From positions 248,001 to 312,000 of the forward strand of contig CM059453.1 in the NCBI GenBank assembly GCA_030390025.1: a DNA stretch of 64,000 nucleotides, in the 5' to 3' direction. The translations under genes were made by a program, and so were the position numbers. Shown piece by piece: positions 1 to 64,000 of this stretch. The notes below the pieces were generated by a model. That model was not told the DNA's origin, made no database searches, and saw only the letters and a list, made by a program, of their open reading frames with translations. The stretch is from Squalus acanthias. Taxonomy: Eukaryota. How positions within the stretch are numbered: position 1 is the first letter of the stretch; each line of letters begins with the position of its first letter.

Positions 1-870
1 CTGCTAAGGGATATAGATAGACTGTGACTGTAAGGTGGCAGATGGAGAATAATGTCGGGAAATGTGAGGTTATTCACTTTCGTATGGTGAATAGCAAAGA
101 GAATATTTTTTAACTGGTGAGAAACTTTCAAATGCTGGTATTCAGAGAGATTTGGTTGTCCTCGTTCAAGAAACACAGAAAGCTAGCATACAGGTACAGC
201 AAACAATAAGGAAGGCAATGGTATGTTGGCCTTTATTCCAAGGGGGTTGGAGTATAAGAGTAAGGAAGTCTTCCTAAAATTGTACAGGGCCTTGGTGAGA
301 CCACACCTGGAGTACTGTGCACAGTTTTGTTCTCCTTATCTAAGGAGGAATATACTTGCCATGGAGGCGGTGCAACGAATGTTTACTAGGTTGATTCCTG
401 GGATGAGAGGGCTGTCCTATGATGAGAGCTTGTGAAGAATGGGCCTATACTCTCTGGAGTTTAGAAGAATCAGAGGTGATCTGTTTGAAACATACAAAAT
501 TCTGAAGGGGATTGACAGGCTAGACGTTGACAGGTTGTTTCTCCTGTCTGGTGTGTCTAGAAATAGGGGGCATAGTCCCAGGATAAGTGGTAGGCCATTT
601 AAGACCGAGATGAGGAGGAAATTCTTCGCTCAGAGGGTTGTGAATCTTTGGAATTCTCTGCCCCAGAGGGCTGTGGATGCTCAGTCTTTGAGTATATTCA
701 TGGCTGAGATAGATAGATTTTTGGACTCAAGGGGAATCAAGGAATATGGAGGTCCGACGGGAATGTGAAGGTGCGGTCGAAGTTCAGCCATGACCTTATT
801 GAATGGCGGAAAAGTCTCGAGGGGCCGTATGGCCTACTCCTGCTCCTATTTCTTATTTCTTATGTTCTTA
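1..870 (+). mobile_element. CR1 LINE 3' fragment (degenerate RT C-terminus and tail), intronic
   Basis: LYRALVRPHLEYCAQF ... LYSLEFRR..GDL ... FAQRVVNLWNSLP; tail ggcctactcctgctcctatttcttat. Confidence 0.93.
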
Positions 871-977
871 AGTCTTTCCTGACTACTGACGTCCTTCATC
901 GCGCAGGCGCAGTTGGCTTTCATTAAACATTCCAGTTAATTAAGAGAAGTGCCTCGTTTGCATTTGTTATTATTCAG

Positions 978-1065
978 GAAGAAACACGGAGAAGCTGCAC
1001 GTGTCTCCGAAGCACACGATGATTTGGTGATTTATAGTCGGGTGCAGTACGCACTAAAGGCTGAC
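978..1065 (+). CDS. Upstream gene B paralogue, exon 7 (ITIM VIYSRV); 5' part of the gene lies before the window
   Basis: 2 nt differences from 40774-40861; splice sites intact. Confidence 0.85.
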
Positions 1066-1844
1066 GTAAGTGATGCCAAGCTGGGCTGACAATTGAAGGA
1101 TGTTTGGTGTGCTTTCAACCAGCAATGACTCATTTGGGCAATACCAAACAGATAAACTGGAGTGTCAGAAAATTGTTGTCCATTAAGATGGATTAACCGC
1201 TTCACGTCACTAAGAGTGCAACATACCTACAGACTCTACGTGTAGTGACCTACTAAATCCAATTAGGGAGTATTTCTCACCTTGGCGTTCCTTCAAAAAA
1301 CAAATTCTTAATATAAGAATGCCTTGCCAATGTCATCTTACCCCCCTACCAATTAGGTCTCATCTGTTAAATGCCCAACAAGATCACAAAATGTCAGCGA
1401 CCCCAGAGGGGATAATCGTTGTCATTCCTCAGGTTTATTTGCAACTTCCGAATTGCATCTTGCTGCCGATGTGATCCCCATGGTCCACACCTTTGCGTAA
1501 GAAGGTTCTGGCTTCAGGCTTCGCCCCAGCATTTGAATCTATAATCTGGTCTGATACTTCACTTCAACACTGAAGGTGTGCAGCATTGCCGGAAGACCCG
1601 TCCTTTCGATAAGATGTTAAACGAGGCCACGTTTGTTTCCTCGTATGGAGGGAAACGATCATATGGTCCTACTGTGGTGACGGATGAGAGTTTTCCCAGT
1701 GCCCTTTCTAACATTTCTCCCTCAATGAACACCAGCTAAAACAGATTAATTCGACATTCATCCAATTAAGTGGTTGCTGCATTTTTCCTACAATAGCGGC
1801 AGGAATTCAAAAGTTATTATTGCATAGCAGTGCTTCGGTCTTAA

Positions 1845-2807: not shown

Positions 2808-2975
2808 AGGGACGATCAGTGTACAGAGGCTGCTCGTGGCACCGCACAATCGACTAAACCAGCTCAGAATGACGAGATTGCGTACGCGACCGTCAATTTC
2901 ACCAACTATCGCAAACATGATAAATATATTCAAAATGAGGAGAACTGCGAATATGCAGCAATTAAACAGAACTGA
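2808..2975 (+). CDS. Upstream gene B paralogue, terminal exon (IAYATV, CEYAAI)
   Basis: Reads RDDQCTEAARGTAQSTKPAQNDEIAYATVNFTNYRKHDKYIQNEENCEYAAIKQN* after a gttacag acceptor. Confidence 0.87.
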   Translation, partial: RDDQCTEAARGTAQSTKPAQNDEIAYATVNFTNYRKHDKYIQNEENCEYAAIKQN

Positions 2976-6795: not shown

Positions 6796-7053
6796 NNNNN
6801 NNNNNNNNNNNNNNNNNNNNNNNNNNNNNNNNNNNNNNNNNNNNNNNNNNNNNNNNNNNNNNNNNNNNNNNNNNNNNNNNNNNNNNNNNNNNNNNNNNNN
6901 NNNNNNNNNNNNNNNNNNNNNNNNNNNNNNNNNNNNNNNNNNNNNNNNNNNNNNNNNNNNNNNNNNNNNNNNNNNNNNNNNNNNNNNNNNNNNNNNNNNN
7001 NNNNNNNNNNNNNNNNNNNNNNNNNNNNNNNNNNNNNNNNNNNNNNNNNNNNN
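6796..7053. other. Assembly gap (258 N)
   Basis: Run of N. Confidence 1.
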
Positions 7054-16812: not shown

Positions 16813-19573
16813 ATTTTGGGAGTGAACAATCTATGGATTGTAAATCAAATCGTATCAGGAAAAGATTTTAAAATGTTAGCTATTTCTCTCGGAAAGATAT
16901 CCATTATCACAACACTTCCTGGATTGCAAGTTTTTGTTCGAACTCATAAAAAACAATTGTGTGAAGATATTGCCCAGTTCCATCTGTCACAATAGGGTGA
17001 ATGCCGCTGATTTTCATTTGCTTTTAATTGCGGCTTATTCACTGGACTCCTCGTGCTGGAGATATCGCTCCTGCTTTCGAACGTTTGAAACACTGACAGC
17101 TGCATACAGGACCTCTTCACTTTGAGCTGACTGGTTTGATGGAGCCCCTCTCACACCAATGTTTCTATACTTGTCTTGTCTCTGTAACAGAAAGTACTGC
17201 GTTAGATGTGGAGGTACTGAACCGGGTGAGACTGCGCTTACTATTTCAGAATAACCCGCTTTATTCCATCACTGCCACTATTTTAATGGTCCTATTCAGC
17301 TCCTTCTGCCTCGAAAAGGAATCCTTGGGCGTCCGCTGGCCCCGAGTACCGGCGCGCCAAGAGTATTGCCCCCTCCTCAATACTTAGCCGACTGATTCAG
17401 ATAGCGCCGCGAACGTTCAGAGGAGCGCTACCAAACAATATTGGAGACCGACCATTAATGTCCCTTTATATATTTAATAGGTTCACATAACACTTACATC
17501 GCACAGAGATCTGATTGGAGCTGTTTGCGGTGCCCAGGGTATTTCCAGCCACGCACCAATACTCCCCCTCATCTTCAGAACTAATGCTGTGAAATATCTG
17601 CTTTAGTTCACCGGTGGAAGACCTGCTGATCTCTGCACCATCTCGGAGCAATTTTAATCTGACCAGCGGGTACCCCATGGCCGTTCAGTATAATAATAAT
17701 GAGCATCCTTCCACTGTTACTATTGAGGAATTGAGGCACGGTTTCCTCAGTGCATCTGAAACACCCAAGATCATTGGTGTTATCGGAAAATGTCGGAGCA
17801 GAGGTATAAAATCAATCCGGTTGACAACCAAATAACAATATTAAAGCAGATTTGGTGGTTATATTGTCAACTGTAAATTGAAAAGCCAGCTTGAGATTGT
17901 TGATGTTCCACCGACAAGCTTATTTAGATCTGAAACATGCTTTAACTCAACCTTTCCTCCTCTTCTCTTCAAAGAGTTGTAGTGACAGCCTGGTCGTGGT
18001 TCTGCTCCACAGATACGTCAATCAAGCGGCCATTCCTCCCAGAGCAAGAACAGTGGGCTTTCCCATCCCTTAAACAGAGCTGTTGAGGCCAATTGTAGTA
18101 TCGCGACCACCGCCCCAGCCAACTCGACACAGACCCTCTGTTTCAGGTACTCTCTGGCTGCAGCTATATCAGGAATTGGGAGCTTTTGCAATAATATTTG
18201 ACGTAAACGACAACCATGGAGCGACAAATATTACTCCATGGATCTGTATCAGTGTTAAATAATACAACTTACAATAAATCTCAGATAGTCAATTTGGTTC
18301 ATTTTTTAAAGAAACATAGGCCATTCAGCACCTCGAGTCTGATCCACTGATCAATTAGATCATAGTTAATCCATATTTTAACTCCATCTACCCGCCTTTG
18401 CTTTAATGTAACCCTTAATAGCCTTATCTAAAAAAAATCTATCCATCGCAGTTTAGAAATTTTCAATTTTCCAGGCCAGCTATCACTCCACTGAGAATAA
18501 GAACAAGTTTGGATTCTATTTACCAACAGGATGGTAGAAGGAAGGGTACAGCAGTTACTTACAGTCCAGTGTAAGTGTTTCTTGAACGGTACCCACGATA
18601 CCATCAAATACAAGCTTACATCCCATCCTTTTCCCTTTATGGTCCAGTGATGGCGTGAAGGTGAAAGTTGATGAAACCGTCCAGGAACCCTCGAAACTTT
18701 GTCCACTGTGTCTTGAAGTTTTAGTCTCTTGCAGTGAAGGAAGTGTATCGTCGTCCTGAATCCACATCAGTTCAGGTGTGGCGGACGGGCAAGTGTTGGT
18801 GACACAGCAGGTCAAATGTGCTGTTTGTCCAGCAATCAGTCACCCAGAGACTGATATCCATGACTTATCTGTAAGAAGAGAAAAAAATTCGCGTTACACT
18901 TGCTATCAGTATTTAAAAAAAGTAGAGTGAAATTCAAGGCGTTTCAGCCCAACGCCTGAGATAATAGCTTGAATAAAAATTATTGTATTTTTCCATTGTT
19001 CTCTGGTGACGGACACGGACTCGATGGGCCGAATGAACTCCTTCTGTGCCGTTATGGCTCTATCGTGCAGGGGAAGGTGCCTATTGTCAGTTATTACTTA
19101 ACGGTTACAGAATCAATCAGTTGATATATGTGTTCCTCAACCTAATTATCACCCACTATTTCACATGAATTATTCATTCCTTCCAGCTTCTTATAGTTCA
19201 GTCACCACTCTATTGCACACAAGTGTTTCAACTCAAAATTAGTTCAGACAAAACATAGAAAACTGTGTTCAAGATTATGTTTCATATATGCAGTTGGGAT
19301 AGACTCATGGATACTCTTAGTTTCATGGCTCAATGTGACGTGAAATGCTTAATTTACCTGATGAGGCACAGGGGCGAATTTAACTGTTGCTTATAATTCA
19401 TTTGACCTCATTGAAGGTCGTGATAGGAGCGCTGCAGACGGTCTTCAGGGAGAGGAAAAGTTTAACTATCATCCATTGTTCCCATTAACAACAGCGGGAA
19501 AGTGTAAATATATCAGAAGAAAGCAAAAGTGAGAAGTCGCACAACACCAGGTTATAGTCCAACAGTTTTATTT

Positions 19574-22776: not shown

Positions 22777-24565
22777 TTCTATAACACACTCATGGGTATC
22801 ATGCAGTGTACCAGCCCTGCAGCTGCAGCCTGTGACTTGGGCCAAGAGTAACAAGATATATTTACACTTTAAGCTCAAGTTAAATGGCACTGAGGAGATG
22901 GAATATAAAGCATAAAGGAACAATTCAAAAAACTTACATAAAATAGAAAGAGTGACCTTATATCCGGAAGAATATCCTTCTATAATATTCTGGGCAGTGG
23001 TGATCTTCAATACGGAATAATAGTCACCTCGATCGCGCATGCTGATGTCCTTTAACCGGAAGGAATATTGTTTCTTTACCAAATAGCCGGTGAACTCAGT
23101 TCTACCGCTATATTTCAAGGACACGTTGTCTGAATCCCGCGAATCATAGTTAATCGAGACCCCTGAGGTTCCAGGATCATAACCCCCCTTTAACCACATA
23201 CCTTCTGGACTGCGGCCATAGCCGGGATAATCAAATGTACACTGATCTCTGCACATGACCGGTTCACCCCGACACTTTCCACGGCACCTTCGCAGACCAT
23301 CGTGAACTATGCACAACTGGTGAGAAAATAGAAATTAAACACCAATTGAAACCCGCAACAATATAGCAATTAAAACATACCCTGACCGTCAAGTTAAATA
23401 CTATGAATTTAACCTTTAAACATCCACAAACATATTCATTAGTACATCTAATGAAATTCGTGCAATTTTCTCCAAAACTCTCTAAATTCTATTAAATATT
23501 CCGTTACAAGCCAATAAATCATAGTGTAATTATCAAATCAATCCTATATAATACATAATAAAGTTCTGAATAAAATATACATTAAATACCCACTGCGTGA
23601 ATGCACAAATCATTGACTAATCGTATGTTATGTCTGAAACATTGATATTTTGTCTGACATAAATTATTAAAAATGAATATTTTACCTTCGCTAATTATCA
23701 GAATGGAAATAAATCGAATACTCTTCATGACTGTAGGCGGTTGACGATGTCAAAATGACATAAATTGTTTTTATCTCAGATATAAGTGATTTGGTTTCTG
23801 TGTTTGGTCCGCCGGTAATATATTGGAGTTTGTAATGAATCGAATCACAATATTAGGAGGTCAGCTGTTCGCCACCCACCATTCATTGGGAACCGTGGTA
23901 GCTCACACAGCTTTCGCCACTCCTCAAATGTTGGTGATCTAAACTGCTGGAAATCTGGACTCCTCAAATATAACAGTTTACATCAGTGTGTGGCCCAGCT
24001 GTTGCAGGATATATGAGGCTCAACTACCGCTGAAGAAACATGAGCAGAGAATCACCCAGCCACCTCATCATCTGCACAGTTACAGGACAGGCAGTGGCAC
24101 TTTAGATTGCAATAGCTAAAATAGCCTCTACATCAACTTTAGACGCCTCAACTCTCAACTCCCACACTCTGAGCTATTTATCAGCGCTTGAACTGCGAAT
24201 GTTTCAAGTCTGAAGCTGTGGTTATTTCTGTAGCCGTTGTCGACAGACGTGTGGGTTGATCACCTTCAGTAGTTCGGGGGCACAACACGTATCTGAAATG
24301 TCAAAATTTCAAGTGTTTCTCAGAAGACAGTTCAAGAGCGTAAAGTGCAGTTCTTAGAAGTGACTTCAATTCTTTATATTAACAGTCCAGCGAGCTGAAA
24401 TCTGCTGAAATTAACTCATTGAGATCCGAGTTGCTACAATGACGGGTTTATGAAGTTTCTGAGTTTAGTGCTAGAACTCTGAGGTGTGACTTGAGCTTTT
24501 AGATTCGAGTCTCAGCGCTGCTGGAAATAATGTGGATATTTTTATTTACGGGACCAAATCCCTGC

Positions 24566-29289: not shown

Positions 29290-31343
29290 AGAATTACTCT
29301 GTCTCCCTATATTGACCACACTGATCTGTTTGTCCGAAACTATTGCTTCAATAAATTTTATCTGTGTCTGTTGCAGCAATATTTGTATTTACGACAGGAA
29401 CCTTCAGTCCATTTCACACGTCACAGACCTCATAACTAAATTTCAATAAATGCACTGCAACAAATAGGGTGACATTTGTGTTTATTTTTGCAAAATTACT
29501 GAGCTTGAGTGTGAATGTAAAGAGTTAAATCAATTAGAAGAAAGTTTGTTTACCACAGCGTCAAACGGTTAACTGTCAAACAGCTCCTATCTACGACGTC
29601 AAAGATGCATATTGGAGTGCTCATGAACGAAGGTGACGAAACCACACGTCTACAGAGCACGTAAGCTAACTAACTGTAGTTAACAACTCTTCAACATGCA
29701 TCTCGAATTAGCTGCCAGGAAGCTGAATATGTGTGAAATGTGAGTCAGAGGCTTCTGCAAGCGTGGGCGGTGCTATTCTGACGCAGACGCCAATATATCA
29801 ATATCATAAGTAAAAGTACATTTGGTGTTTGTGTGTGATGTTAGAGAGAGAGAGAAAGAGATGTTGTTTCTGTATGAAGTATACTTTAGCAACTGTTAAA
29901 CATACCATAACATCATATTTTGTTATAGTCGGTCACACGCAGACCATGTACAAGATGTGCTAGCTGCCTACCTCACCAACGGAATTGATGAAGTGAGCAC
30001 TGTTCCTACAGATCGGTAGGAACAGAATCGGACTTCCCCGTTAGTGTGATCCTTATTTGTAAAGATATGCAAGATGTGACTGGAAAGTTGAATGCAGAAA
30101 ACTGAATGCTGTTAATTGTGAAATAGGTTCTTAAATTTGAGAATGAAATCGGCAGCAGATTCCAGCCATGAGGAGTTGTGCGCTCGTTTCGTAGATTTTC
30201 ACTCCAGTGCTTCAGGATGAATCAATCTATGTGCAAAGTGGGCAAATAATCTAATATTCCTGGCCGGGTGGGAAACGTGCGGGAGGGCTCAGCCCAGCAT
30301 AAAACACGCCGCGTTGAATTCAAATAATAAATCAACTGATGACTGACTCTGGCGAAGTTGATTTTGAGATCTGAGCCTCTTGTTCCCAATTAGAATAATT
30401 AGTTCGGTCCTGAACCCACGTCAATTTCATTCCACTTGCTCCCAGTGAAATTTAGAGAAAAAATGTTTCAGAATTACTATGCATCCAGGATTCTGCCCAC
30501 ACTGATCATGTTGCAGGACCTGTTGTTTCAATCATTTTCAGCTATGTATTTTCCAGCGGTGTTTGCATTTTCGACAAAAAACTTCAAGTCCATTTTACAT
30601 GTCCCAGACCTCAAAACTAACTTGCAATAAAAGCACTGCAACAAACAGGGTGGATTTTCTGTTATATTCTGCAAAATTAGCGAGCTTGAATGGGAATTTA
30701 AAAAGATAAATCAATTAGAAGAAAGGCTGTTTACTGACAAGCAGCTCCTATCTCTGACGTCACAGATGCATGTGTAGCGCTCCTTAACGAAGGTGACGAA
30801 ACCACACGTCGACCGACTGCAGCAAGCAAACTAACTGAGGTTAACAACTCTCCAACATTCATCTCGTATTAGCTGCCAGAAAGCTGTATATGTGTGAAAT
30901 GCGAGTCAGAGGCGTCTGCAAGCGTGGGCGGTATCATTCTGACGCAGATGCTAATATATTAATATCATAAGTAACAGTACATTTGGTGTTTGTGTGTGTT
31001 TGTTCGAGAGAGAGAGAGAGATGTTGCTTCGGTATTAAGTATTCTTTAACAACAGTTAGAAATACCATAAATCATATTCAGTAACAGTCGGTCACACGCA
31101 GCCAATGTACATGATGTGCTAGCTGCCTATCTCACCAACGGAGCTGATTGAGTGAGCACTGTTCCTGCAGATCGGTATGACTCGAATCGGACTTCCCCGA
31201 AAGTCTGATGCTGATTATCAAAGAAATCCAAGATGTGACTGGAAAGAAGAATACTGAAATCTGAATGGTGTAAATTGTGAATTGGGTTCATCATTTTGCG
31301 AGTGAAATCGGCAGCATTTTCTAACCATGAGGAGTTGCGTGCT
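29290..31343 (+). repeat. Local direct duplication of the gene B upstream region and first codons (29290-30184 and 30470-31343)
   Basis: Both end in gaaatcggcagca..ccATGAGGAGTTG. The first copy breaks off after 5 codons (ATG at 30168). Confidence 0.88.
30790..31326 (+). promoter_or_regulatory. Putative gene B promoter
   Basis: Lies directly 5' of exon 1. RUNX-like AACCACA near 30800, Ets/PU.1-like ACTTCCCC near 31191 (kept in all three copies), GAAA repeats at 31242-31310. Motif matches only. Confidence 0.45.
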
Positions 31344-40300: not shown

Positions 40301-42762
40301 TGAAGGGGATTGACAGGCTAGACGCTGACAAGTTGTTTCTCCTGTCTGGTGTGTCTAGAAATAGGGGGCGTAGTCCCAGGATAAGGTGTGAGCCATTTAA
40401 GAACGAGATGAGGAGGAAATTCTTCGCTCAGAGGGTTGTGAATCTTTGGAATTCTCTGCCCCAGAGGGCTGTGGATGCTCAGTCTTTGAGTATATTCATG
40501 GCTGAGATAGATAGATTTTTGGACTCAAGGGGAATCAAGGGTTATGGAGGTCCGACGGGAAAGTGAGGTTGAGGTCGAAGTTCAGCTATGACCTTATTGA
40601 ATGGCGGAAAAGTCGCGAGGGGCATTATGGCCAACTCCTGCTCCAATTTCTTATTTCTTATGTTAAGTCTTTCCTGACCTACTGACGTCCTTCATCGCGC
40701 AGGCGCAGTGTGCTTTCATTAAACATTCCAGTTAATTAAGAGAAGTGACTCGTTTGCATTTGTTATTATTCAGGAAGAAACACGGAGAAGCTGCACGTTT
40801 CTCCGAAGCACACGATGATTTGGTGATTTACAGTCGGGTGCAGTACGCACTAAAGGCTGACGTAAGTGATGCCAAGCTGGGCTGACAATTGAAGGATGTT
40901 TGGTGTGCTTTCAACCAGCAATGACTCATAACGGGCAATACCAAACAGATAAACTGGAGTGTCAGAAACTTGTTGACCATTAAGGGAGGATTAACCGCCT
41001 CACGCCGCTAAGAGTGCAACATAGCTCCAGACTCTACGTATAGTGACCTACTACATCCAATTAGGGAGTATTTCTCACCTTGGCGTTCCTTCAAAAAACA
41101 AATTCTTAATATAAGAATGCCTTGCCAATGTCATCTTACCCCCCTACCAATTAGGTCTCATCTGTTAAATGCCCAACAAGATCACAAAATGTCAGCGACC
41201 CCAGAGGGGATAATCGTTGCCATTCCTCATTTTTATGTGTAATTTCCGAGTTGCATCTTGCTGCCGATGTGGTCCCCATGTTCCCCACCTATGGGTAAGA
41301 AGGTTCTGGCTTCAGGCTTCACCCCAGCATTTGAACCTATAATCTGGGCTGATACTTCACTTCAACACAAAGGTGTGCAGCATTGCCGGAAGACACGTCC
41401 TTTCGATTAGATGTTAAACGAGGCCACGTTTGTTTCCTCCTATGGAGGGAAACGTTCATATGGCCCTACTGTGGGGACGAATGAGAGTTTTCCCAGTGCC
41501 CGTGCTAACATTTCTCCCTCAATGAACACCAGCTAAAACAGATTAATTCGCCATTCATCCAATTAACTGGTTGCTGCATTTTTCCTACAATAGCGGCCGG
41601 AATTCAAAAGTTATTATTGCATAGCAGCGCTTCGGTCTTAATAATCACAGAATCATACAGCCCAGCAGGATGCCATTCAGCCCACGGTGCCTTTGCTGGC
41701 TGTTTGAAAGAGCTAAAACATTAGTCACACTACACTTCTTTTTACCCTTAGCCCTGATTGGATGTTTTTTTTCATGTTCACGCATATATCCAATTTCCTT
41801 TTGAAAGTAGCGATTGAATCTGCTCCCACCGCCCTATGAGAAGTGCATTCCAGATCACAACAACTCGCTGAGTTAAAAACATCCTTCTTACCTCGCATTT
41901 TGTTCTTGACCCAAATATCTTCAATCTGTGTTATCTGGTTATCGAAGCTCCTGCCAGTGGAAACAATCTCTCCTTATTTACTGTATCAAAATTCTGCAGA
42001 ATTTTGATCACCAATATCTAATCTCCTTTTATCATTCACTAAACTAACGAGAACAACTCCAGTTTCCCTCGACTGACCGTTTAAGTGTAGTCCCTCATTT
42101 CTCCTATAATTCTAGTAAATTTGCACTGTACGCTCTCTAATGCATTGACATCCTTTTGACAGTGTTATGCAAGAATTGGACACAATACTCCAGCCGAGGC
42201 ATAACCGCTGATGTATAACGGTTCACCGTATCTAACTTGTTTTCATAATCTGTACCTGAATTTATAAAAACCCGGATTTAGAAGCCTTAGAATCATAGAT
42301 TTTTACAGCACAGAAAGAGACATTTCGGACCATAGTAACTGTGCTGGCTGTTTGAAAGAGGTTTCCAATTTAGTCGCACACACCAGCCTTATCGACTCGT
42401 CCGGATAGACAATTGCAAGTTCTTTATTTCTTGCATCAAGACTTAACAACGCTCATTTCATGAATCCGCGCCTTTAGACAACTTACCAGGGATAAAATAG
42501 TAAGATTTCTTCTGTTGCAGACAGCAATCTCCCATCGCATTCTGCTCCATATCTGCAATAACTCCACATCTAACACAAATACCTTCCGTTACAGAGGGAC
42601 GATCACTGTACCAAGGCTGGTCGGGGCGCCGCACAATCGAATAAACCAGCTCAGAATGACGAGATTGCGTACGCGACCGTCAATGTCTCCAACTTCCGCA
42701 AACATGATTACTTTATTCAAAATGAGGAGAGCTGCAAATATGCAGCAATTAAACAGAACTGA
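31327..42762 (+). CDS. Gene B: intact Siglec/MAG-like inhibitory Ig-superfamily receptor, 8 exons, 543 aa (signal, V-set, 3 C2-type, TM, ITIM tail)
   Basis: Exons are 31327-31369, 31994-32374, 34562-34873, 35463-35720, 36638-36925, 38218-38311, 40774-40861 and 42595-42762. All introns are GT-AG, with phases 1,1,1,1,1,2,0. Total 1632 nt = 544 codons with no internal stop. Siglec-type Cys pattern present (GSCAEIRCMFDYP ... QCSFLL; THNCP in d2). Confidence 0.9.
31994..32374 (+). CDS. Gene B exon 2, Siglec-type V-set Ig domain
   Basis: ttttgctcag acceptor and G|GTGAGT donor, 381 nt. Reads VSAVAGSCAEIRCMFDYP..W..GRAEF..QCSFLLKDIRKSDEGTY. Confidence 0.95.
33420..33760 (-). mobile_element. Highly degenerate CR1 RT fragment in gene B intron 2
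   Basis: GVPEFCPVGLLLFTGCINNLDKALKRIMSKF resembles GVPQGSVLGPLLF.IYINDLD..ISKF. Confidence 0.55.
34562..34873 (+). CDS. Gene B exon 3, C2-set Ig domain 2
   Basis: tttttatag acceptor and G|GTAAGC donor, 312 nt. LNCSITHNCP..W..SVITFTPSPAHDGKILGC is typical of Siglec domain 2. Confidence 0.95.
35463..35720 (+). CDS. Gene B exon 4, Ig domain 3
   Basis: gtttcag acceptor and T|GTAAGT donor, 258 nt. Reads EGSSLLLYCTACGKP..W..EDDGEYWCIAENAVG. Confidence 0.95.
36638..36925 (+). CDS. Gene B exon 5, membrane-proximal Ig domain 4 (MAG domain-5-like)
   Basis: ttttttag acceptor and G|GTACGT donor, 288 nt. The C..CSC..ANP..W..SSL.L..C.AAN.HG pattern resembles the membrane-proximal domain of MAG and multi-domain Siglecs. 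Confidence 0.93.
37361..37833 (+). mobile_element. HE1-type V-SINE with triplicated CR1-derived tail (78-bp period)
   Basis: tRNA head with A box (tggcatagtgg) and B box (gggttcgaatcc). V-domain tgtgtggagtttgcacattctccccgtgtctgcgtgggtttcctccgg. Tail repeats start at 37615, 37693 and 37771. Confidence 0.9.
38218..38311 (+). CDS. Gene B exon 6, transmembrane (GIFSRTTVLIIGGGIIGLVILIAVVLTLKIKR)
   Basis: atttcag acceptor and AG|GTAGGT donor, phase 1 in and phase 2 out. Uncharged 22-aa hydrophobic run followed by basic residues. Confidence 0.9.
39507..40665 (+). mobile_element. CR1 LINE 3' fragment in gene B intron 6 (duplicate of 1-870)
   Basis: KVPHKRLL, FVDDTKLGG and LVRPHLEYC motifs with stops and frameshifts; CR1 tail. 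Confidence 0.93.
40774..40861 (+). CDS. Gene B exon 7, cytoplasmic with ITIM VIYSRV
   Basis: ttattattcag acceptor and GAC|GTAAGT donor, 88 nt, phase 2 to 0. Reads KKHGEAARFSEAHDDLVIYSRVQYALKAD. Conserved at 978-1065. Confidence 0.88.
42595..42762 (+). CDS. Gene B exon 8, ITIM IAYATV plus distal ITIM-like CKYAAI, stop
   Basis: ccttccgttacag acceptor with an upstream CTAAC branch point. Reads RDDHCTKAGRGAAQSNKPAQNDEIAYATVNVSNFRKHDYFIQNEESCKYAAIKQN*. Confidence 0.9.
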   Translation, partial: RDDHCTKAGRGAAQSNKPAQNDEIAYATVNVSNFRKHDYFIQNEESCKYAAIKQN

Positions 42763-51659: not shown

Positions 51660-54600
51660 TCATTTGCTTTTAATTGCGGCTTATTCACTGGACTCCTCGT
51701 ACTGGTGATTTCGCTCCTGCTTTCGAACCTTTGAAACACTGACAGCTGCATACAGGACCTCTTCACTTTGAGCTGACTGGTTTGATGGAGCCCCTCTCAC
51801 ACTAGTGTTTCTATACTTGTCTTGTCTCTGTAACAGAAAGTAGTGCGTTAGATGTGGAGCTACTGAACCGTGTGAGACTGCGCTTACTGTTACAGAATAA
51901 TCCGTTTTATTCCATCACCTCCACCATTCTAATTGTCCCATTCAGCTGCTTCTGCCTCGAAAAGGAAACCTTGTGCTTCCGCTGGCCCGAGTAACGGCGC
52001 GCCAAAAGTATTGCCCCCTCCTCAACACTCAGCCGTCTGATTTTGATAGCGCCGCGAACGTTCAGAGGAGCGGTACCAAACAACATTTGAGATCGCCCAT
52101 TAATGTCCCTTTATAAATTAAATAAGTTCACATAACACTTACATTGTACAGAAATCTGTGTGGAGCTGTATGCGGTGCCCAGGGTATTTTCAGCAATGCA
52201 CCAATACTCCCCCTCATCTTCAGAACTAATGCTGTGAAATATCTGCTTTAGTTCACCGGTGGAAGACCTGCTGATCTCTGTACCATCTCGGAGCAATGTT
52301 AAACTGACCGGCGGGTTCCCCATGGTCGTTCAGTATAATAATAAAAGACTTCCTTCCATTATTACTATAGAGGAATTGACGCTTGGTTTCCACAGTGCAT
52401 ATGAAACACGCAAGATCATTGATGTTATCGGAAAATGTCGGAGCAGAGGTTTAAAAAACAAACCGGTTGACAAACAACGAAGAATATTAAAGCAGGTGGT
52501 TATATTGTCAACTGTAAATTGAAAAGCCAGCTTGAGATTGTTGATGTTCCACCGACAAGCTTATTTAGATCTGAACCATGATTTAACTCAACCTTTCCTC
52601 CTCTTCTGTTCAAAGAGTTGTAGTGACTGCCTCCACGTGGTTCTGCCCCACAGATCCGTCAATCAAGCGGCCATTCCTCCCAGAGCAAGAACAGTGGGCT
52701 TTCCCATCCCTTAAACAGAGCTGTTGAGGCCAATTGTAGTAACCCGACCATCGCCCAGCCAACTCGACACAGACCCTCTGTGTCAGGTACTCTCTGTCTG
52801 CAACTATATCAGGAATTGGGAGCTTTTGTAATAATATTTGACGTAAACGACAACCAGGGAGCGACCAATATTACTCCATGGGCCTGTATCAATTTTAAAA
52901 AATACAACTTATAGTAAATCTCAGATAGTCAATTTGGTTCATTGATTATAGAAACATAGGCCATTCAGCATTTCGAGTCTGTTCAACTAATCAATTAGAT
53001 CATGGTTAATCCATATTTTAACTCCGTCCACCAGCCTTTGCTTTATTGTAACCCTTAACACACTTACCTATAAAAAAAACTATTCATCGCAGTTCTGAAA
53101 TTTTCAATTTTCCAGGCCAGCTATCACTCTACTGAGAATAAAGACAAGTTTGGATCTTATCTGCCAACAGGATGGTAGAATGAAGGGTACAGCAGTTAAT
53201 TACAGTCCAGTGTAAGTGTTTCTTGAACGGTATCGACGACACCATCAACTATAAGCTTATATCCCATCCTTTTGCCTTTATGGTGAAGGTGAACATTGAT
53301 GAAACCGTCCAGGAACCCGCGAAACTTTTGCCACTGTGTCTTGAAATGTGTTTCTCTTGCAGTGTAGGAGGTTTATCCTCGTCCTGAATCTACATCAGTT
53401 CAGGTTTGGCGGATGGGCAACTGGTGGTGACTGAGCAGGACAAATGTGCTGGTTGTCCAGCAATCAGTCACCCAGAGACTGATATCCATGACTTATCTGT
53501 AAGGAGAGAAAGAAATTCGCGTTACAGTGGCTTTCAAAATAAGAAAAATAGGGAGTGAAGATAAAGGCGATTCAGCCCAACGCCTGAGATAATATCTTGA
53601 ATAAAAATTATTGTTTTTTTCCATTGTTCCCTGGTGACGGACACGAACTCGATGGGCCGAATTACCTCCTTCTGTGCCGTTCTGACTCTATGGTGCAGGG
53701 GAAGGAGCCTATTGGCAGTTATTACTTAACGGTTACCGAATCAATCGGTTGACGTATGTGTTCCTGAACCTCATTATCACCCACTATATAACATGAATTA
53801 TTCATTGCTGGCCTGTTTCTTATAGATCAGTCACCACTCTATTGAACACAAGTGTTTCAACTTAAAATGAGGTCCGACAAAACATAGAAAACTGGGTCCA
53901 AGATTATGTTCCATGTCTGCAGTTGGGATAGAATCTAGGATACTCTTAGACTAATGGCTCAGTGTCACGTGAAACGCTTAATTTACCCTATGAGGAACAG
54001 GGGTGAATTTAACTCTTGCTTATAATTAATTTGAACTCATTTAAGGTCGTGATAGGAGCGCTGCATACGGTCTTCAGGGAGAGTGAAAGGTTATCTATCC
54101 TCGTTTGTTCCCATTAACAACAGCGGGAAAGTGCAAAGATATCATAAGAAAGCAAGACCCGGTTAAGGGATTCAAGCCCTAACTCAGAGACTAAAGCAGA
54201 AGCTGTAGCCTGACACTCCATTGCAGTACTGATGCAATGCTACAATGCTGGAGATGCCATCTTATGGATGAGACGTTAAACCGATGTCCCGTCTTCCCTC
54301 ACAGGTGGATGTAAAAGATCCCAATGTATTATTTCAAATGTCCCGTGTCCTGGTTAACATTTTGCATCAACCAGCACCTAAAACAGATCATCTGGTCACT
54401 ATTGCATTGTTGAGATATCCCTCCTATCCTTAAGTCTTGTCCACTTATTCCCCCTCAGTAGTACAAACCTTGACATTTTTGTCCCGAATCCAAAAAGGAT
54501 TGTATTTTGACCCGCCAGTCTGTACATCTGAAAACAACATTTAGTGTTTCTCTTTCTAACTGAACATTACAGCGAGCTTCTGTAAGTGTGTAAGAATGGC

Positions 54601-57170
54601 AGTGCTGAATATCTGTTCAGGTCAAAACATAACAAGTCAACTGGTCCAGATGAGATGCATCCTCGGTAGCTGAGGAAGCTAAAAAGGATACAGAAGAAGC
54701 TCTGACAACAATCTCTCAATCCTCAATGGATATTGGAGTGGTACCAGAAGACTTGAGGATTTCAAACTTTACACCGCTGTTCAAGAAAGTGGAGACGGAT
54801 GAACCTGGGAACTACATCTTAATCAGTCTAACGTCAGTGGTGGGAAAGCTAAATAAGTCCACTATGAAGGACGAGATTAATTCTCACTTGGAGACGCATG
54901 GGTTTATTAGGGAAGCCAGCAGGGCTTTGTTAAAGGCAAATCGTGATTGACTATCCCGATTGAGTACTGCGATGAAGCAATAGAGAGGGTTGATGACGGT
55001 AGTGCAGTTTATGTTGCATATGTGGACGTTAAAAAGGGTTTGGATGAAGTAACTCATAACAGGCTATTCGGAAAATAGAAGAACAATGTATTTAAGGGAT
55101 GGTGGCAACGTAATTACGAAATTGGCTAAGGGATAGGAGGCAGAGTGAAGTGGTGAACGGCTGCTTTTCTGACAGGAGCGAATTATTCTGTGGGATCCCC
55201 CATGGGGTTGATATTAGCACCATTGCTAATCTTGTTCTATATGAATGATCTGGACTTGGGTATTGGGAGTAACGTTTCGAAGTTTGCGAGTGATACAAAA
55301 CTTGGCAACGCATTAAATCGTGAGCATGATTTTAGCAGACTTCAGGAGGACATCTACAGACTGTTAAAATGGGCAGGCACATGGCAGATGCAATTTACTG
55401 CGGATAAGTGTGAAGCACAAATGCACTTTGGGAGAAATATATGGAGAGGCAACATACGCTAAATAGTACTATATTTTGAGGGAGGCTGCAAGAACAGATG
55501 GTCATGGGGTACATCTTGACATTTCTTTGAAGATGGCAGGGTTCATTGACAAGGCGTTTAAAAAGAAAGCACATAGGATACTTCGGTTATTTTTACATAG
55601 GGTCAATGAAAATAAAAACAAGGATGTCATGCTTAAGTTTCACAAATCTCTGGTTTTGCCTCAGCTGGAGTTTTGTGTACAATTCTCGGAATTACACTTG
55701 AGGAAGGAGGTCAAGGCCCTGGAGGAGGTACTGAAGAAGTTTGCCAGGATAATACCAGTGATGAGGACCTTCAGTTACGTGGAGAGAATGGAGAATGGGC
55801 TTGTTCTCCTTATAGTAGAGAAGGATAACGGGAGACCTAACAGTGCTATTCAAAATTGAGGGGTTTTGATAGAATAATTAAGGAGAAACCATTTCCTCTG
55901 GCATTTGGGTTGGTAACCAAAGTTCTCACATTTAAACCAATTGGCATAAGAACTTGTGGGGAAATGGGGTGAAATTTCTTCACCCAGAGGTTTGCTAAGA
56001 TTTAGAATGCACCACCTGAAAGGATGGTGGCATCCGATTCAATGGGAATGTTTTAAAAGCAATTAAAGCTGTCCTAAAACAAGGCTGATTTACAAGGTTC
56101 TGTGGAAAAAGATAGGGAGTGGGACTAAATTGTTTATGTCTTTCAAAGAGCCGGCAAAGGCGTGGTAGGCCGAATGGCCTCTTTCTGTGCTGTAAGATTC
56201 TATGATTTTATGAATCTATTCTATAACAAAATCATGGGTATCATGCAGTGTACCAGCCCTGCCGCTGTAGCCTGTAACTTGGGCCAAGAGTAGTAAGAAA
56301 TCTTTACATTGAAGCTCAAATTAAATGACACTGAGGAGATGGAAGATAAACTATAAAGGACAAATTCAAAAACTTACATAAAATAGAAAGAGTGACCTTA
56401 GATCCGGAAGAATATCCTTATATATTATTCTGGGCGGTGATGATCTTCAATAAGAAATAATAGGCAACTTGATCGAGCTTGCTGATGTCCTTTAACCGTA
56501 AGGAACACTGTTTCTTTATAAATTCGCCGGTGAACTCAGCTCTACCGCTATATTTCAAGGGCACGTTTTCTGAATCCCGGGAATCATAGATAATCGAGCC
56601 CCCTGAGGTTCAAGGATCAGGACCCCACTTTAACCACATACACTGGGGACTGAGGCCATAGGTGGGATAATCAAATGTACACGGGATCTCTGCACATGAC
56701 CCGTTCACCGCCGACACTTTCCACGGCACCTTCAGAGACGATCATGAACTATGCACAAATGTTGAAAAAATAGAAATTATACACCCATTGAAATCCGCAA
56801 TAATATAACAATATAAATATACCCTGAATGTCAAGTTAAATACTATTAATTTAACCTTTAAACACCCACTAACATATTCATTCGTACATCTAATGAAATT
56901 CGTGCAATTTTCTCCAAAACTCTTTAAATTCTATTAAATATTCCATTGCAAGCCAATAAATCATAGCGTAATTATCAAATCAATCCTATATAATACATAA
57001 TAAAGTTCATAATAAAATATACATTAAATACCCATTGTGTGAATGCACAAATCATTGACTAACCGTATGCTATGTCTAAAACATTGTTATTTTTTCTGAC
57101 AAAAATTATTAAAAATGAATATTTTACCTTCGCTAAATATCAGAATGGAAATAAATCTAATACTCTTCAT
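51660..57170 (-). pseudogene. Gene A copy 2: Siglec-like pseudogene
   Basis: Exons: 57170-57128; 56758-56378 (acceptor AG>AT, three stops); 53496-53204 (shared TGA at 53470-53468, 13-nt deletion); 52400-52143 (acceptor AG>AT, shared TGA at 52332-52330); 51827-51660 (VLYAAV, shared TAA at 51683-51681). Confidence 0.92.
54630..56220 (+). mobile_element. Old degenerate CR1 RT fragment with tail (gene A intron 2)
   Basis: TPLFKK..PGNY..ISLTSVVGK, SKFASDTKLG and LVLPQLEFCVQF motifs; CR1 tail at 56165-56220. Confidence 0.9.
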
Positions 57171-61774: not shown

Positions 61775-62215
61775 CATAAGGTCATAGGTATTAGGAGCAG
61801 GAGTAGGCCAAAAGGCCCCTCCAGCCTGTTCCACCATTCAATAAGATCTGGCTGATTTTCGACCTGAACTCCACTTTCCCTCCCGATCTCCATAACCGTT
61901 GAGTCCCTTGATATCCAAAAATCTAGCTCAGCCTTGAATATAGGCAACAATTCGGCATCCACAGCGATTTTGGGTAGAGAATTTCAAAGATTCATAACCC
62001 TCTGATTTAAGAAATTCCTCGTCATCTCAGTCTTTAATGGCCGGCCCCGAACCCTGAGGCTATGCCTCCTAGTTCTATAATCTCCAACTAGGGGAGACAA
62101 CCTCTTAGCATCAATCCCGTCAATACACTTCAGAATCTTATATATTTCAATGAGATCACCTGTCATCCTTCTAAACTCCCGAGAATGTAGGCCCAATCCA
62201 CTCTACTTCCCCTCC
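61775..62215 (-). mobile_element. CR1 3' fragment (duplicate)
   Basis: Homologous to 27945-28380. Confidence 0.88.
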
Positions 62216-63962
62216 CATCTATCCTTCCTCTTGCACTCTGCAGATATTTAAGCATTATTCTGTCCTAATCAAACTGCTTGCGTTGTCTGAGCTTCCTTCC
62301 TACATTTCACTTCTTCACTGTTTACAAGCCACTAAGGACATGCTTGTTTTTCAAAAGTTCATTGCGTATTACCTTTACTTTCTCAATTTGTACCTAATCC
62401 CTTCTTGTTCATTGTGCATATCTTTACAGTCTCCCTCTCGCTGTCTTCCTCTCCCATTCTCTCGGTGCCTTGTTCTACCTAGTTTCGTAAAGGTGACAGG
62501 GATTTTCCGCTGGTGGCTTAATTGCAAACTGCACCCAGAATACGCTGGAAATCGCGCCACTTTTGACTAGCTGAAGTTAAGTCCCCAATGTAAACTCTCC
62601 CATGAACCTGGGCAATTGAGCGGATTCGATGCGTGACTGGAACAGGGGGCATTTCTACAGCATCACAAAGCGGAGTGGGTTTCTTGAGAAATGAGACCTT
62701 CTTGCACTTCTCTGATTGGCCGGTGAGGATGGCGTGTCACCAATCTAACAAGAATTAACGCAATTGCCCCATTTTTACGCTGAATCAAAAAGGTCCAAAT
62801 TGTCATTAAATATAAGGAGAAACTTTGTGAAATTATAGCATTGTTGGCCGTATCGACAATGCTCTCTTGTCCCTCCGGTCTCCACCGCTCGCAGAAGGCC
62901 TCAAACATACCGGGAATCACCGCATGCTTCCACTCCAGGGACACAGGAACGTGTTGGGAGACAGGCATCAGACCAAGTGGTCCCCTGGAACGGGTGCTGC
63001 CTGGACCTGTGAATTGTCACCTTGGCCAAGCCCAGGAGCTGACCCACGAGGAGGTTCGGCGATTCCCCTCCGCACCAGGTGACCAATGAGAATTACTGTG
63101 TCTCCCTATATTGAACACACTAATCTGTTTGGCCGAAACTATTGCTTCAATCAATTTTATCTGTGTCTGTTGCAGCAATATTTGTATTTACGACAGGAAT
63201 CTTAAGTCCATTTCACAAGTCACAGACCTCATAACTAAATTTTAATAAAGGCACTGCAACAAATAGGGTGAAATTTGTGTTTAGTTCTGCAAAATTACTG
63301 AGCTCGAGTGTGAATGTAAAGAGTTAAATCAATCAGAAAACAGTTTGTTTACCACAGCGTCAAACGGTTTACTGTCAAACAGCTCCGATCTGCGACGTCA
63401 CAGATGCATATTGGAGAGTTCCTTAACGAAGGTGACGAAACCGCACGTCTGCAGACTGCAGCAAGCAAACTAACTGTAGTGACACCTCGACAACATTCAG
63501 CTCGTATTAGCTGCCAGAAAGCGGAATATGTGTGAAATGTGAGTCATAGGCGTCTGCAAGCGTAAGCGGTGCCATTCTGACGCAGATGCCAATATATCAA
63601 TATCATAAGTAACAGTACATTTGGTGTTTGTGTGTGTTTGTTCGAGAAATAGAGAGATTTTGCTTCGGTATTGAGTATTCTTAAATAACAGTTAGAAATA
63701 CCATAAATCATATTCAGTAACAGTCGGTCACACGCAGCCCATGTAAATGATGTGCTCGCAGCCGACCTCACCAACGGAGCTGATTGAGTGAGCACTGTTC
63801 CTGCAGATCGGTATGACTCGAATCGGACTTCCCCGATAGTCTGAAGCTGATAATCAAATAAATCCAACATGTGACTGGAAAGAAGAATGCTGAAATCTGA
63901 ATGGTGTAAATTGTGGACTGGGTTCTTCATTTTGCGAGTGAAATCGGCAGCAGTTTCCAGCC

Positions 63963-64000
63963 ATGAGGAGTTCCGTGCTGCTGCCTCTCATAATGTTGAC
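63963..64000 (+). CDS. Downstream gene B paralogue, exon 1 (MRSSVLLPLIML..., cut by window end)
   Basis: Near-identical to 31327-31364 and preceded by the homologous promoter region. Confidence 0.8.
   Translation, partial: MRSSVLLPLIML

What the first reader, a model, noticed from the sequence alone, without database searches (positions are those of the whole stretch)
1..64000. Tandemly amplified head-to-head cassette of Siglec/MAG-like receptors: one live triple-tyrosine inhibitory gene plus one dead passenger per unit
Seen: the order is B'(3' end, +), psiA(-), B(+), psiA(-), B''(5' end, +), so the array has at least three B copies. A and B have matching exon sizes (43, 381, 258 and 168 nt) and even homologous branch-point sequence. 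Inference: an older inverted duplication made the A/B pair, and the pair was then amplified as a 33-40 kb unit. Known: mammalian CD33-related Siglec clusters also grew by inverse duplication and birth-and-death. This looks like an independent chondrichthyan expansion of inhibitory Siglec-like receptors. I cannot tell whether it has been described.
Basis: partly seen in the sequence, partly recalled or inferred. Interest (0 to 1): 0.85.

Follow-up and report, generated by a model that had tools for sequence, protein, structure and literature searches.

The report
Duplicated shark Siglec-like receptor gene cassette
A cartilaginous-fish genome carries a repeated block of about 33 to 40 kb that holds one intact gene for an inhibitory-type, Siglec-shaped immune receptor lying head-to-head with a dead sister gene, an ordinary way for immune receptor families to grow but in a family that seems not to have been described in sharks.

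Summary
Self-comparison shows a direct repeat, 1-30177 against 39802-63972, about 90-92% identical, with the offset shrinking from 39.8 to 32.6 kb.

- **Gene order:** B' 3' exons, psiA1 (-), complete B (+), psiA2 (-), start of B''.
- **Gene B:** eight GT-AG exons (43, 381, 312, 258, 288, 94, 88, 168 nt) giving 543 codons. It encodes a signal peptide, a Siglec-type V domain, three more Ig domains, an uncharged membrane span and a tail with two ITIMs plus a C-terminal tyrosine motif.
- **psiA:** both copies share three stop codons and lack the exons for domain 4, the membrane span and the first tail exon. A therefore died before the block was copied.
- **Family placement:** A and B belong to an elasmobranch-only clade (100/99*), separate from the MAG, Siglec-1 and CD33-related-like clades.
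- **Sugar-binding arginine:** absent in the window's B and in 13 of 13 B-type relatives.

Three points remain open. Expression was not shown. An exon-2-less relic of a B 5' end lies upstream of B, so the history is not a clean copy.

The scan has 86 other unchecked notes that mention Siglec; the eight shown lie elsewhere in this genome. No paper on shark Siglecs was found. Interest is moderate.

The parts
978..1065 (+). B' exon 7 (first cytoplasmic exon, ITIM VIYSRV), intact, AG and GT kept
   Evidence: 86 of 88 nt identical to B exon 7
2808..2975 (+). B' last exon (168 nt with stop), intact; ITIM IAYATV and C-terminal EYAAI kept
   Evidence: 152 of 168 nt identical to B exon 8; dN/dS 1.07
6796..7053 (.). 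assembly gap (258 N), intergenic; flanks collinear with unit 2
17014..17181 (-). psiA1 last exon (168 nt); premature TAA at 17037-17035 shared with psiA2
17498..17755 (-). psiA1 exon 4 (258 nt, Ig); TGA at 17687-17685 replaces the first Ig cysteine codon, shared with psiA2
18563..18868 (-). psiA1 exon 3 (about 306 nt, C2 Ig); TGA at 18842-18840 shared with psiA2
22938..23316 (-). psiA1 exon 2 (V domain, 379 nt): two private 1-nt deletions, E-strand Cys changed to Tyr, Val at the arginine position
23686..23728 (-). psiA1 exon 1 (43 nt, signal peptide), intact with GT donor
29290..30266 (+). relic of a B-like 5' end: promoter-like stretch, first about 17 nt of exon 1, then joined to the start of intron 2 (exon 2 missing)
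   Evidence: 80.6% to 30470-31343 and 80.7% to 32392-32473; 87-91% to unit 2
31328..31370 (+). B exon 1 (43 nt from ATG, signal peptide)
31994..32374 (+). B exon 2 (381 nt): Siglec-type V domain, three Siglec cysteines kept, Ser at the arginine position
34562..34873 (+). B exon 3 (312 nt): C2 Ig domain with the extra cysteine five residues after the first Ig cysteine
35463..35720 (+). B exon 4 (258 nt): I-set Ig domain
36638..36925 (+). B exon 5 (288 nt): fourth Ig domain; no counterpart in psiA
38218..38311 (+). B exon 6 (94 nt): uncharged transmembrane span
40774..40861 (+). B exon 7 (88 nt): tail with ITIM VIYSRV
42595..42762 (+). B exon 8 (168 nt with stop): ITIM IAYATV and C-terminal KYAAI
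51660..51827 (-). psiA2 last exon (168 nt); shared TAA at 51683-51681
52143..52400 (-). psiA2 exon 4 (258 nt); shared TGA at 52332-52330; private loss of the acceptor (AG to AT at 52402-52401)
53204..53496 (-). psiA2 exon 3 (293 nt); shared TGA at 53470-53468; private TAG at 53392-53390 and a 13-nt deletion
56378..56758 (-). psiA2 exon 2 (381 nt): three private in-frame stops, acceptor AG changed to AT at 56760-56759, Leu at the arginine position
57128..57170 (-). psiA2 exon 1 (43 nt), intact
63963..64000 (+). B'' exon 1, first 38 nt, cut by the end of the window

Best explanation
The window is part of a tandem array in an elasmobranch genome. An old duplication gave two sister genes for Siglec-fold receptors, A-type and B-type. 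Here they lie head-to-head about 6.4-7.6 kb apart.

In this lineage the A gene was disabled by stop codons and by loss of the exons for domain 4, the membrane span and the first tail exon. The whole A-B block of about 33-40 kb was then copied in tandem. Its copies have since drifted to about 8% mismatch and collected different LINE insertions, different minisatellite lengths and private lesions in psiA. Unequal exchange left an exon-2-less relic of a B 5' end.

B has stayed intact. It most likely encodes a type I membrane receptor. The outermost V domain would bind a ligand. On ligand binding, the two ITIMs and the C-terminal tyrosine motif would be phosphorylated and recruit SH2 phosphatases, damping the cell's activation as ITIM receptors do.

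The B lineage lacks the arginine that anchors sialic acid in Siglecs. Its ligand is therefore probably not sialic acid bound in the canonical way.

- **Shown:** gene anatomy, lesions, repeat structure, family placement.
- **Inferred:** expression, ligand, signalling.
For: **Repeat.** 1-30177 matches 39802-63972 at 86-92%. Over the B'/B 3' region, 6218 of 6753 aligned positions are identical, with 28 indel events.

**B gene model.** There are eight exons with canonical splice sites and consistent phases, giving 543 codons. The architecture matches the 545-aa Heptranchias protein P0013 exon for exon.

**Constraint on B.** A neutral simulation at the per-lineage rates measured beside the gene predicted a mean of 9.5 disabling lesions. 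In 0 of 20,000 replicates was B free of lesions.

**psiA.**
- Three stops and the loss of three exons are shared by both copies.
- psiA1 has 2 private frameshifts. psiA2 has 7 private lesions.
- dN/dS between the two copies is 1.97, 1.18 and 0.85 for exons 2, 3 and 4.

**Siglec fold.**
- Pfam matches V-set and Ig_CD22.
- The best solved relative is sialoadhesin domain 1, by sequence (E 2e-12) and by fold (1qfo, TM 0.74/0.80, model pLDDT 90.9).
- The three V-domain cysteines and the extra domain-2 cysteine align with those of the reference Siglecs.

**Family.** The A+B clade has 100/99* support and is apart from MAG, Siglec-1 and CD33-related-like rows. psiA1+psiA2 are sisters within A-type, and B falls on the B-type side of a 97/91* split.

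**Arginine column.** Arg is present in 9 of 9 reference Siglecs, 5 of 9 A-type and 0 of 13 B-type. The window's B has Ser.

**Tail and membrane span.** The three tyrosine motifs are kept in B, B' and both A-type and B-type relatives. The membrane span has no charged residue.
Against: - **No RNA support.** Three small runs guessed to be RNA, from the same species label, covered only an intronic repeat at 35268-35323. They covered no exon and showed no splice joint. Their tissues are unknown.
- **Weak constraint on the tail.** The last exon differs between B and B' at dN/dS 1.07 (13 non-synonymous, 3 synonymous changes). Apart from its motifs, the tail shows no purifying selection.
- **Only one complete B.** B' and B'' are seen only as end fragments.
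- **Irregular 5' end.** B's promoter and exon 1 are 84.5% like those of B'', while the relic upstream is 87-91% like them. B's 5' part may therefore come from another array member.
- **Arrangement unverified.** It rests on one assembly with a gap. The contigs of an independent DNA sample were about 100 nt long and cannot confirm the order.
- **Trees.** The deep branches that would name the sister group of the A+B clade are unresolved. No Siglec-15 and no confirmed shark MAG was in the tree.
Confidence: 0.75

Rival explanations
1. Assembly artefact: the two units are haplotypes or collapsed and expanded copies of one locus, wrongly joined in series, possibly at the N gap.
For: A 258-N gap lies inside unit 1. 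Short-contig data from another sample could not confirm the order.
Against: - The units differ by 7.9% mismatches and 28 indel events in 6.75 kb.
- They carry different LINE insertions and offsets and different minisatellite lengths, 12.7 against 20.6 copies.
- psiA1 and psiA2 have different private lesions.
- This is far above the difference I would expect between alleles (my expectation; no heterozygosity figure was looked up).
- Both gap flanks are collinear with unit 2.
Confidence: 0.04
2. B is not a working gene either. It is a recently silenced or never-expressed copy whose open frame has survived by chance or by gene conversion from a working copy elsewhere in the array.
For: No exon was covered in three runs guessed to be RNA. 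dN/dS is 1.07 in the last exon against B'. B's 5' end looks exchanged and a relic sits upstream. The scan's notes suggest many more Siglec-like genes in this genome, which could act as conversion donors (unchecked).
Against: - 0 of 20,000 neutral replicates keep the frame, the splice sites and the start.
- All 14 splice dinucleotides are canonical.
- In an independent DNA sample, the contigs laid on exons 1-5 showed no insertion or deletion in those exons.
- The ITIM cores are identical in B and B'.
Confidence: 0.15
3. B is the shark orthologue (or a recent co-orthologue) of a conserved Siglec, namely MAG, CD22 or Siglec-1, as the automatic names of its relatives suggest.
For: NCBI's pipeline names relatives 'myelin-associated glycoprotein-like', 'sialoadhesin-like' and 'Schwann cell myelin protein-like'. 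Sialoadhesin is the best solved match for the V domain. The sister group of the A+B clade is unresolved.
Against: - The MAG clade of six bony-vertebrate proteins has 100/100* support and excludes all 16 A/B rows. The Siglec-1 clade (98/94*) does the same.
- Turtle MAG is 38-40% identical over about 88-90% of its length to ray-finned fish MAG. It is only 27% identical over 65% of P0013.
- Sharks have separate 'CD22-like' proteins of 1027-1280 aa.
- Each shark has several A and B paralogues. At least six are recorded on a contig of the same length in Heptranchias.
- B has 4 Ig domains and ITIMs.
Confidence: 0.06

Closest known systems
CD33-related Siglecs of mammals (for example Siglec-5, -7, -8, -10)
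   Same: - An N-terminal V domain followed by C2 Ig domains, one membrane span, and a tail with an ITIM plus a distal ITIM-like motif.
- Genes in tandem clusters with pseudogenes.
- The V domain diverges faster than the membrane-near domains. Here B is about 50% identical to its best relatives in exon 2, against 75-78% in exons 4 and 5.
- An inverse duplication is proposed for the mammalian locus. I saw this only as the title of Cao et al. 2009 in the reference list of PMC5702289.
   Different: - Not the same lineage: the CD33-related-like rows form their own clade (99/94*) outside the A+B clade.
- B lacks the canonical arginine.
- The tail has three conserved tyrosine motifs.
- The host is an elasmobranch. 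PMC7226832 (passages seen) states that fish genomes lack CD33-related Siglecs, but it deals with teleosts only.
Sialoadhesin (Siglec-1) domain 1
   Same: It is the best solved match of B's V domain by sequence (E 2e-12) and by predicted fold (1qfo, TM 0.74/0.80, 27% identity). The positions of the three cysteines are shared.
   Different: In the alignment, sialoadhesin has the sialic-acid-binding arginine where B has serine. The Siglec-1 proteins seen here are about 1500-1700 aa long. That Siglec-1 has 17 Ig domains and no ITIM is recalled. Its clade is separate (98/94*).
Myelin-associated glycoprotein (MAG, Siglec-4)
   Same: Same Siglec fold. Automatic annotation names several shark relatives 'MAG-like'. 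Domain 2 of MAG is among the solved matches of exon 3.
   Different: The MAG clade has 100/100* support and excludes A and B. MAG proteins are about 580-680 aa long and are found from ray-finned fish to mammals. No shark MAG appeared among the 120 rows listed of 130 hits, so its absence or presence is not settled.
Siglecs that lost or do not need the canonical arginine
   Same: The fold and the signalling tail are kept without the canonical sugar anchor. [quoted passage not shown]
   Different: In those proteins the arginine is still present. Here it is absent in every one of 14 B-type sequences from sharks and a ray, so the loss is old and kept. Arginine-mutated primate Siglecs such as Siglec-XII are recalled from memory and were not checked here.

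Membership tests
Siglec family (I-type lectins) | N-terminal V-set domain with the cysteine pair on the B and E strands | tested here: met
   Pfam matches V-set (E 1.2e-10) and Ig_CD22 (E 8.8e-8). Both cysteine columns are kept in B and in 9 of 9 reference Siglecs. The disulfide itself is inferred.
Siglec family (I-type lectins) | Extra cysteines in domain 1 and domain 2 for an inter-domain disulfide | tested here: met
   The second B-strand cysteine of domain 1 is kept. The domain-2 pattern of Cys, five residues, Cys aligns with Siglec-8 and CD22 domain 2. That these cysteines bond to each other is recalled knowledge.
Siglec family (I-type lectins) | Canonical arginine on the F strand that binds the sialic acid carboxylate | tested here: not met
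   B has Ser where sialoadhesin has Arg. Arg is present in 0 of 13 B-type relatives and 9 of 9 reference Siglecs. I therefore file B as Siglec-fold or Siglec-like, not as a sialic-acid-binding lectin.
Siglec family (I-type lectins) | Binding of sialylated glycans | not testable with these tools
   Needs a recombinant V domain or an Fc fusion on a glycan array.
CD33-related Siglec subfamily | Descent from the CD33-related lineage | tested here: not met
   The CD33-related-like rows (elephant-shrew Siglec-10, one turtle row and one frog row) form a clade of 99/94* outside the A+B clade of 100/99*. No human or mouse CD33-related protein was in the tree.
CD33-related Siglec subfamily | Membrane-proximal ITIM plus a distal ITIM-like motif, and an uncharged membrane span | tested here: met
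   The motifs VIYSRV, IAYATV and a C-terminal KYAAI are present, and the membrane span has no charged residue. The ITIM signature is as printed in PMC7226832.
MAG (Siglec-4) orthologue | Groups with MAG of other vertebrates; one copy per genome | tested here: not met
   The MAG clade (100/100*) excludes A and B. Each shark has several paralogues, and this window alone holds three B copies.
Unprocessed pseudogene (psiA1, psiA2) | Introns kept, with stops, frameshifts or lost exons, and neutral drift | tested here: met
   Three stops and the loss of three exons are shared. psiA1 has 2 private lesions and psiA2 has 7. dN/dS is 0.85-1.97.
Tandem segmental duplication | Collinear direct repeat of a multi-gene block, with the copies adjacent | tested here: met
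   Adjacency rests on this assembly alone and was not confirmed by long reads.

The most novel reading that the evidence does not exclude
Elasmobranchs built their own large, fast-turning-over family of inhibitory receptors on the Siglec fold. It would be a functional analogue of the mammalian CD33-related Siglecs, but it arose separately. One of its two ancient branches (B-type) has lived without the sialic-acid-binding arginine since before sharks and rays split. That branch would therefore read a ligand other than canonically bound sialic acid. If so, the Siglec fold served as a general self/non-self sensor scaffold at the base of jawed vertebrates, and the statement that fish lack such receptors holds only for teleosts.
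Probability: 0.4. Interest if true: 0.65.

Novelty: new variant of a known kind. Interest (0 to 1): 0.45.

Why it matters
Inhibitory Siglecs are studied almost only in mammals. The one paper on fish Siglecs that I read in part (PMC7226832, passages) says fish have only Siglec-1, CD22, MAG and Siglec-15 and lack the inhibitory CD33-related kind. It does not mention cartilaginous fish.

This window shows, at sequence level, an ITIM-bearing Siglec-fold family that is specific to sharks and rays. The family grows by tandem copying and sheds members as pseudogenes. One of its old branches has no canonical sugar-binding arginine.

That gives comparative immunologists a concrete gene set for two questions:
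- When did the pairing of glycan-type recognition with ITIM signalling arise?
- What does a Siglec fold bind when the arginine has been absent for as long as sharks and rays have been separate?

The cassette itself, one live gene plus one dead gene per copied block, is ordinary birth-and-death evolution.

Tried and rejected
- **Synteny in other sharks.** The only hint is that A-type and B-type proteins are recorded on contigs of the same length in four species: Heptranchias (15,743,313), Heterodontus (44,089,062), Scyliorhinus canicula (165,189,515) and S. torazame (229,598,228). This says nothing about distance or strand.
- **Expression.** The run search found no RNA holder. Laying three runs guessed to be RNA gave only an intronic repeat. 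This is no proof of silence: the runs are small and their tissues are unknown.
- **Haplotype test by depth.** All runs were served as contigs, so depth was not usable.
- **One deletion in psiA.** The 308-nt remnant between psiA exon 4 and the last exon matches B only in the last 36 nt. A single deletion can be neither shown nor excluded.
- **A shark MAG orthologue.** The search with turtle MAG listed 120 of 130 hits and none was from a shark. The word pre-filter may have hidden them.
- **A closer relative or the species' own protein.** Searches with P0013 and P0163 gave nothing above about 78% identity to any B exon.
- **Rooting the V-domain tree.** The outgroup branch was 3.5 changes per column, so I do not use that root.
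- **Joined model.** Every exon was handled apart, the length is a sum of exon lengths, and only the exon-2 V domain was folded.
- **Supplements.** Supplementary files of papers were not opened. Supplementary file 9 of the whale shark paper (PMC8455134) lists Siglec gene families and may bear on novelty.
- **Literature.** Four searches found no paper describing shark or ray Siglecs. Their listings showed 20 of 325, 7 of 7, 25 of 2,753 and 12 of 839 papers, so only the top-ranked rows were seen. The library lacks most subscription journals.

Full report
**Gap first**

The window has one run of N, at 6796-7053 (258 letters). It lies between the stop codon of B' (2975) and the 3' end of psiA1 (17014), so no exon or reading frame discussed here touches it.

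In the self-comparison the left flank 1-6789 matches 39802-46584 and the right flank 7055-7657 matches 46642-47245. Both matches are on the same strand and in the same order. The join across the gap therefore agrees with the second unit. No read was laid across it, so continuity is supported but not proven. I did not fill or read out the missing letters.

**The repeat**

Blastn of the window on itself gives a chain of collinear direct matches from 1-6789 to 24566-30177, against 39802-63972, at 86-92% identity. The offset shrinks stepwise from 39801 to 33842. It is 32619 for 30470-31364 against 63089-64000 (84.5%).

The steps coincide with sequence present in one unit only:
- LINE pieces with reverse-transcriptase and endonuclease matches at 14695-16830 (-) and 21278-22760 (+).
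- A 50-nt minisatellite with 12.7 copies in unit 1 and 20.6 in unit 2.

Over 6753 aligned positions of the B'/B 3' region there are 535 mismatches (7.9%) and 28 indel events. Two haplotypes of one locus would not be expected to differ this much (my expectation; no heterozygosity figure was looked up).

**Gene B**

From the sequence and from tblastn of natural shark proteins, B has eight exons, all with AG and GT.

| Exon | Coordinates | Length (nt) | Content |
|---|---|---|---|
| 1 | 31328-31370 | 43 | signal peptide |
| 2 | 31994-32374 | 381 | V domain |
| 3 | 34562-34873 | 312 | C2 domain |
| 4 | 35463-35720 | 258 | I-set domain |
| 5 | 36638-36925 | 288 | fourth Ig domain |
| 6 | 38218-38311 | 94 | uncharged membrane span |
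| 7 | 40774-40861 | 88 | tail |
| 8 | 42595-42762 | 168, with stop | tail |

- The exon phases fit one another (1, 1, 1, 1, 1, 2, 0).
- The tail holds VIYSRV and IAYATV, both fitting the ITIM signature printed in PMC7226832, and a C-terminal KYAAI. The same three motifs stand in B-type and A-type relatives.

**Other B copies**

- B' exons 7 and 8 (978-1065 and 2808-2975) are intact. They differ from B at 2 of 88 and 16 of 168 positions.
- B'' begins with its ATG at 63963 and is cut by the window's end after 38 nt.
- At least three B copies are therefore seen, but only one is complete.

**Is B under constraint?**

I measured the per-lineage substitution rate (0.0396) and the frameshifting indel rate (0.00178) beside the gene. 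A simulation run exon by exon with these rates predicted a mean of 9.5 disabling lesions. It left B clean in 0 of 20,000 replicates.

Against this, dN/dS between B and B' is 1.07 in the last exon (13 non-synonymous, 3 synonymous changes) and 0.28 in exon 7 (one change of each kind). Outside its motifs, the tail drifts freely.

**Gene A is dead, and died before the copying**

On the minus strand each unit has exon 1 (43 nt, intact), exon 2, exon 3, exon 4 (258 nt) and a last exon (168 nt).

Lesions shared by both copies:
- TGA early in exon 3.
- TGA in place of the first cysteine codon of exon 4.
- TAA in place of the last tyrosine codon.
- No counterpart of B exons 5-7. Exon 4 and the last exon lie only about 310 nt apart.

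Private lesions:
- psiA1 has two 1-nt deletions in exon 2.
- psiA2 has three stops and a lost acceptor in exon 2, a TAG and a 13-nt deletion in exon 3, and a lost acceptor at exon 4.

dN/dS between psiA1 and psiA2 is 1.97, 1.18 and 0.85 for exons 2-4, as expected without constraint. Whether the three exons went in one deletion cannot be told.

**What family**

- Pfam finds V-set and Ig_CD22 in exon 2 and Ig families in exons 3-5.
- Among solved structures, exon 2 is closest to sialoadhesin domain 1 (E 2e-12), then JAML and MAG.
- Exon 3 is closest to domain 2 of Siglec-8, CD22 and MAG.
- An AlphaFold model of the exon-2 domain (pLDDT 90.9) has mouse sialoadhesin domain 1 as its best Foldseek match (TM 0.74/0.80), ahead of generic V domains.
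- A full HMMER scan of 1.84 billion representatives gave 180 hits at E up to 0.001. The best single-domain hits are shark and ray proteins. [quoted passage not shown]
- Identity rises towards the membrane: about 49-50% in exon 2, 60-63% in exon 3, 75-78% in exon 4 and 71-76% in exon 5.

**Trees**

*V-domain tree (46 rows).* psiA1 and psiA2 are sisters (100/98*) among A-type shark proteins. B falls on the B-type side of a 97/91* split. The outgroup branch is too long to trust the root.

*Domains 1-2 of 39 natural proteins (237 columns).*
- All 16 shark and ray A/B rows form one clade (100/99*). It splits into A-type (97/93*, 7 rows) and B-type (100/99*, 9 rows, including the ray Narcine).
- Six MAG proteins (100/100*), two Siglec-1 proteins (98/94*) and three CD33-related-like rows (99/94*) form separate clades.
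- The deeper branches are weak.
- Several rows have long branches, among them two CD22-like rows (Elgaria and the ray Rhinoraja).
- No Siglec-15 and no confirmed shark MAG was included.

For CD22 the answer is less firm.

**The arginine**

In the alignment the canonical arginine is present in 9 of 9 reference Siglecs and in 5 of 9 A-type proteins. It is absent in 13 of 13 B-type proteins. The window's B has Ser, psiA1 Val and psiA2 Leu.

The three V-domain cysteines and the extra domain-2 cysteine are kept. B is therefore Siglec-shaped but fails one defining feature of a sialic-acid lectin. I call it Siglec-like.

**A wrinkle in the unit**

Upstream of B, 29290-30184 repeats B's own promoter and the first 17 nt or so of exon 1 (80.6% to 30470-31343). 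It then runs straight into a copy of the start of intron 2 (30184-30266 against 32392-32473, 80.7%). Exon 2 is missing from this relic.

Unit 2's B'' promoter is collinear with this relic (87-91%) and only 84.5% like B's own. The array has therefore also been reshaped by unequal exchange or deletion after the copying. B's 5' part may stem from another member.

**Reads**

- The run search found DNA holders of one coded species and no RNA holder.
- On 31300-37299, an independent DNA sample covered all 30 bins with short contigs (207 at 99% identity or more, 927 at 95-99%). It showed no insertion or deletion inside exons.
- Three small runs guessed to be RNA covered only 35268-35323, an intronic repeat, and showed no joint.
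- Expression is thus not shown, and the order of the units is not independently confirmed.

**Known or new**

- Four literature searches gave no paper on shark or ray Siglecs.
- The whale shark genome paper mentions Siglec families once, in a list (passage seen).
- PMC7226832 says fish lack CD33-related Siglecs but treats teleosts only (passages seen).
- The inverse-duplication history of the mammalian CD33-related locus was seen only as a cited title.
- Relatives are already in public annotation under automatic names.
- This scan holds 86 unchecked notes mentioning Siglec. The eight shown lie elsewhere in this genome.

My verdict is a real, ordinary birth-and-death cassette in a Siglec-like family. 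The family is specific to elasmobranchs, apparently undescribed in print, and interesting mainly for the old arginine-less B branch.

Noticed in passing
window 29290-30266: A relic of a B-like 5' end. It has a promoter-like stretch and about 17 nt of exon 1 fused to the start of intron 2, with exon 2 missing. It is closer to unit 2's B'' promoter (87-91%) than B's own promoter is (84.5%).
   Followed up: partly
window 24566-25202 and 58010-59030: A 50-nt minisatellite in the shared upstream region between psiA and B, with 12.7 copies in unit 1 and 20.6 in unit 2.
   Followed up: no
window 14426-16830 (-), 20793-22760 (+), 54654-55856 (+): LINE fragments with reverse-transcriptase and endonuclease matches. 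The first is present in unit 1 only. The other two are different insertions in intron 2 of psiA1 and psiA2.
   Followed up: partly
window 187-765 (+) and 39984-40563 (+): Open frames in intron 6 of B' and B that resemble the C-terminal part of the LINE frame at 14426-15165 (about 71% at DNA level). They had no Pfam match.
   Followed up: no
window 35268-35323: A short intronic repeat, the only part of the laid stretch found in contigs of the three runs guessed to be RNA. It continues into unrelated sequence on both sides, so it is probably a dispersed element transcribed elsewhere.
   Followed up: no
window 9867-10230, 13210-13735, 37603-37827: Tandem repeats of 24, 33 and 78 nt. The 33-nt array gives long open frames on both strands that are not genes.
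   Followed up: no
window 2808-2975 against 42595-42762: Between B' and B the middle tail tyrosine sits at a different place (DKY against DYF), and 12 of 55 residues differ. The ITIM core and the C-terminal motif are unchanged.
   Followed up: partly
protein P0009 (Heterodontus francisci): One identical 422-aa B-type protein is filed under three accessions on three contigs. This suggests very recent copies in another shark.
   Followed up: no
protein P0054 (Heterodontus francisci): A 1230-aa 'CD22-like' protein is recorded on a contig of the same length (44,089,062) as A-type P0016 and B-type P0009 and P0164. The family may be linked to CD22 in sharks.
   Followed up: no
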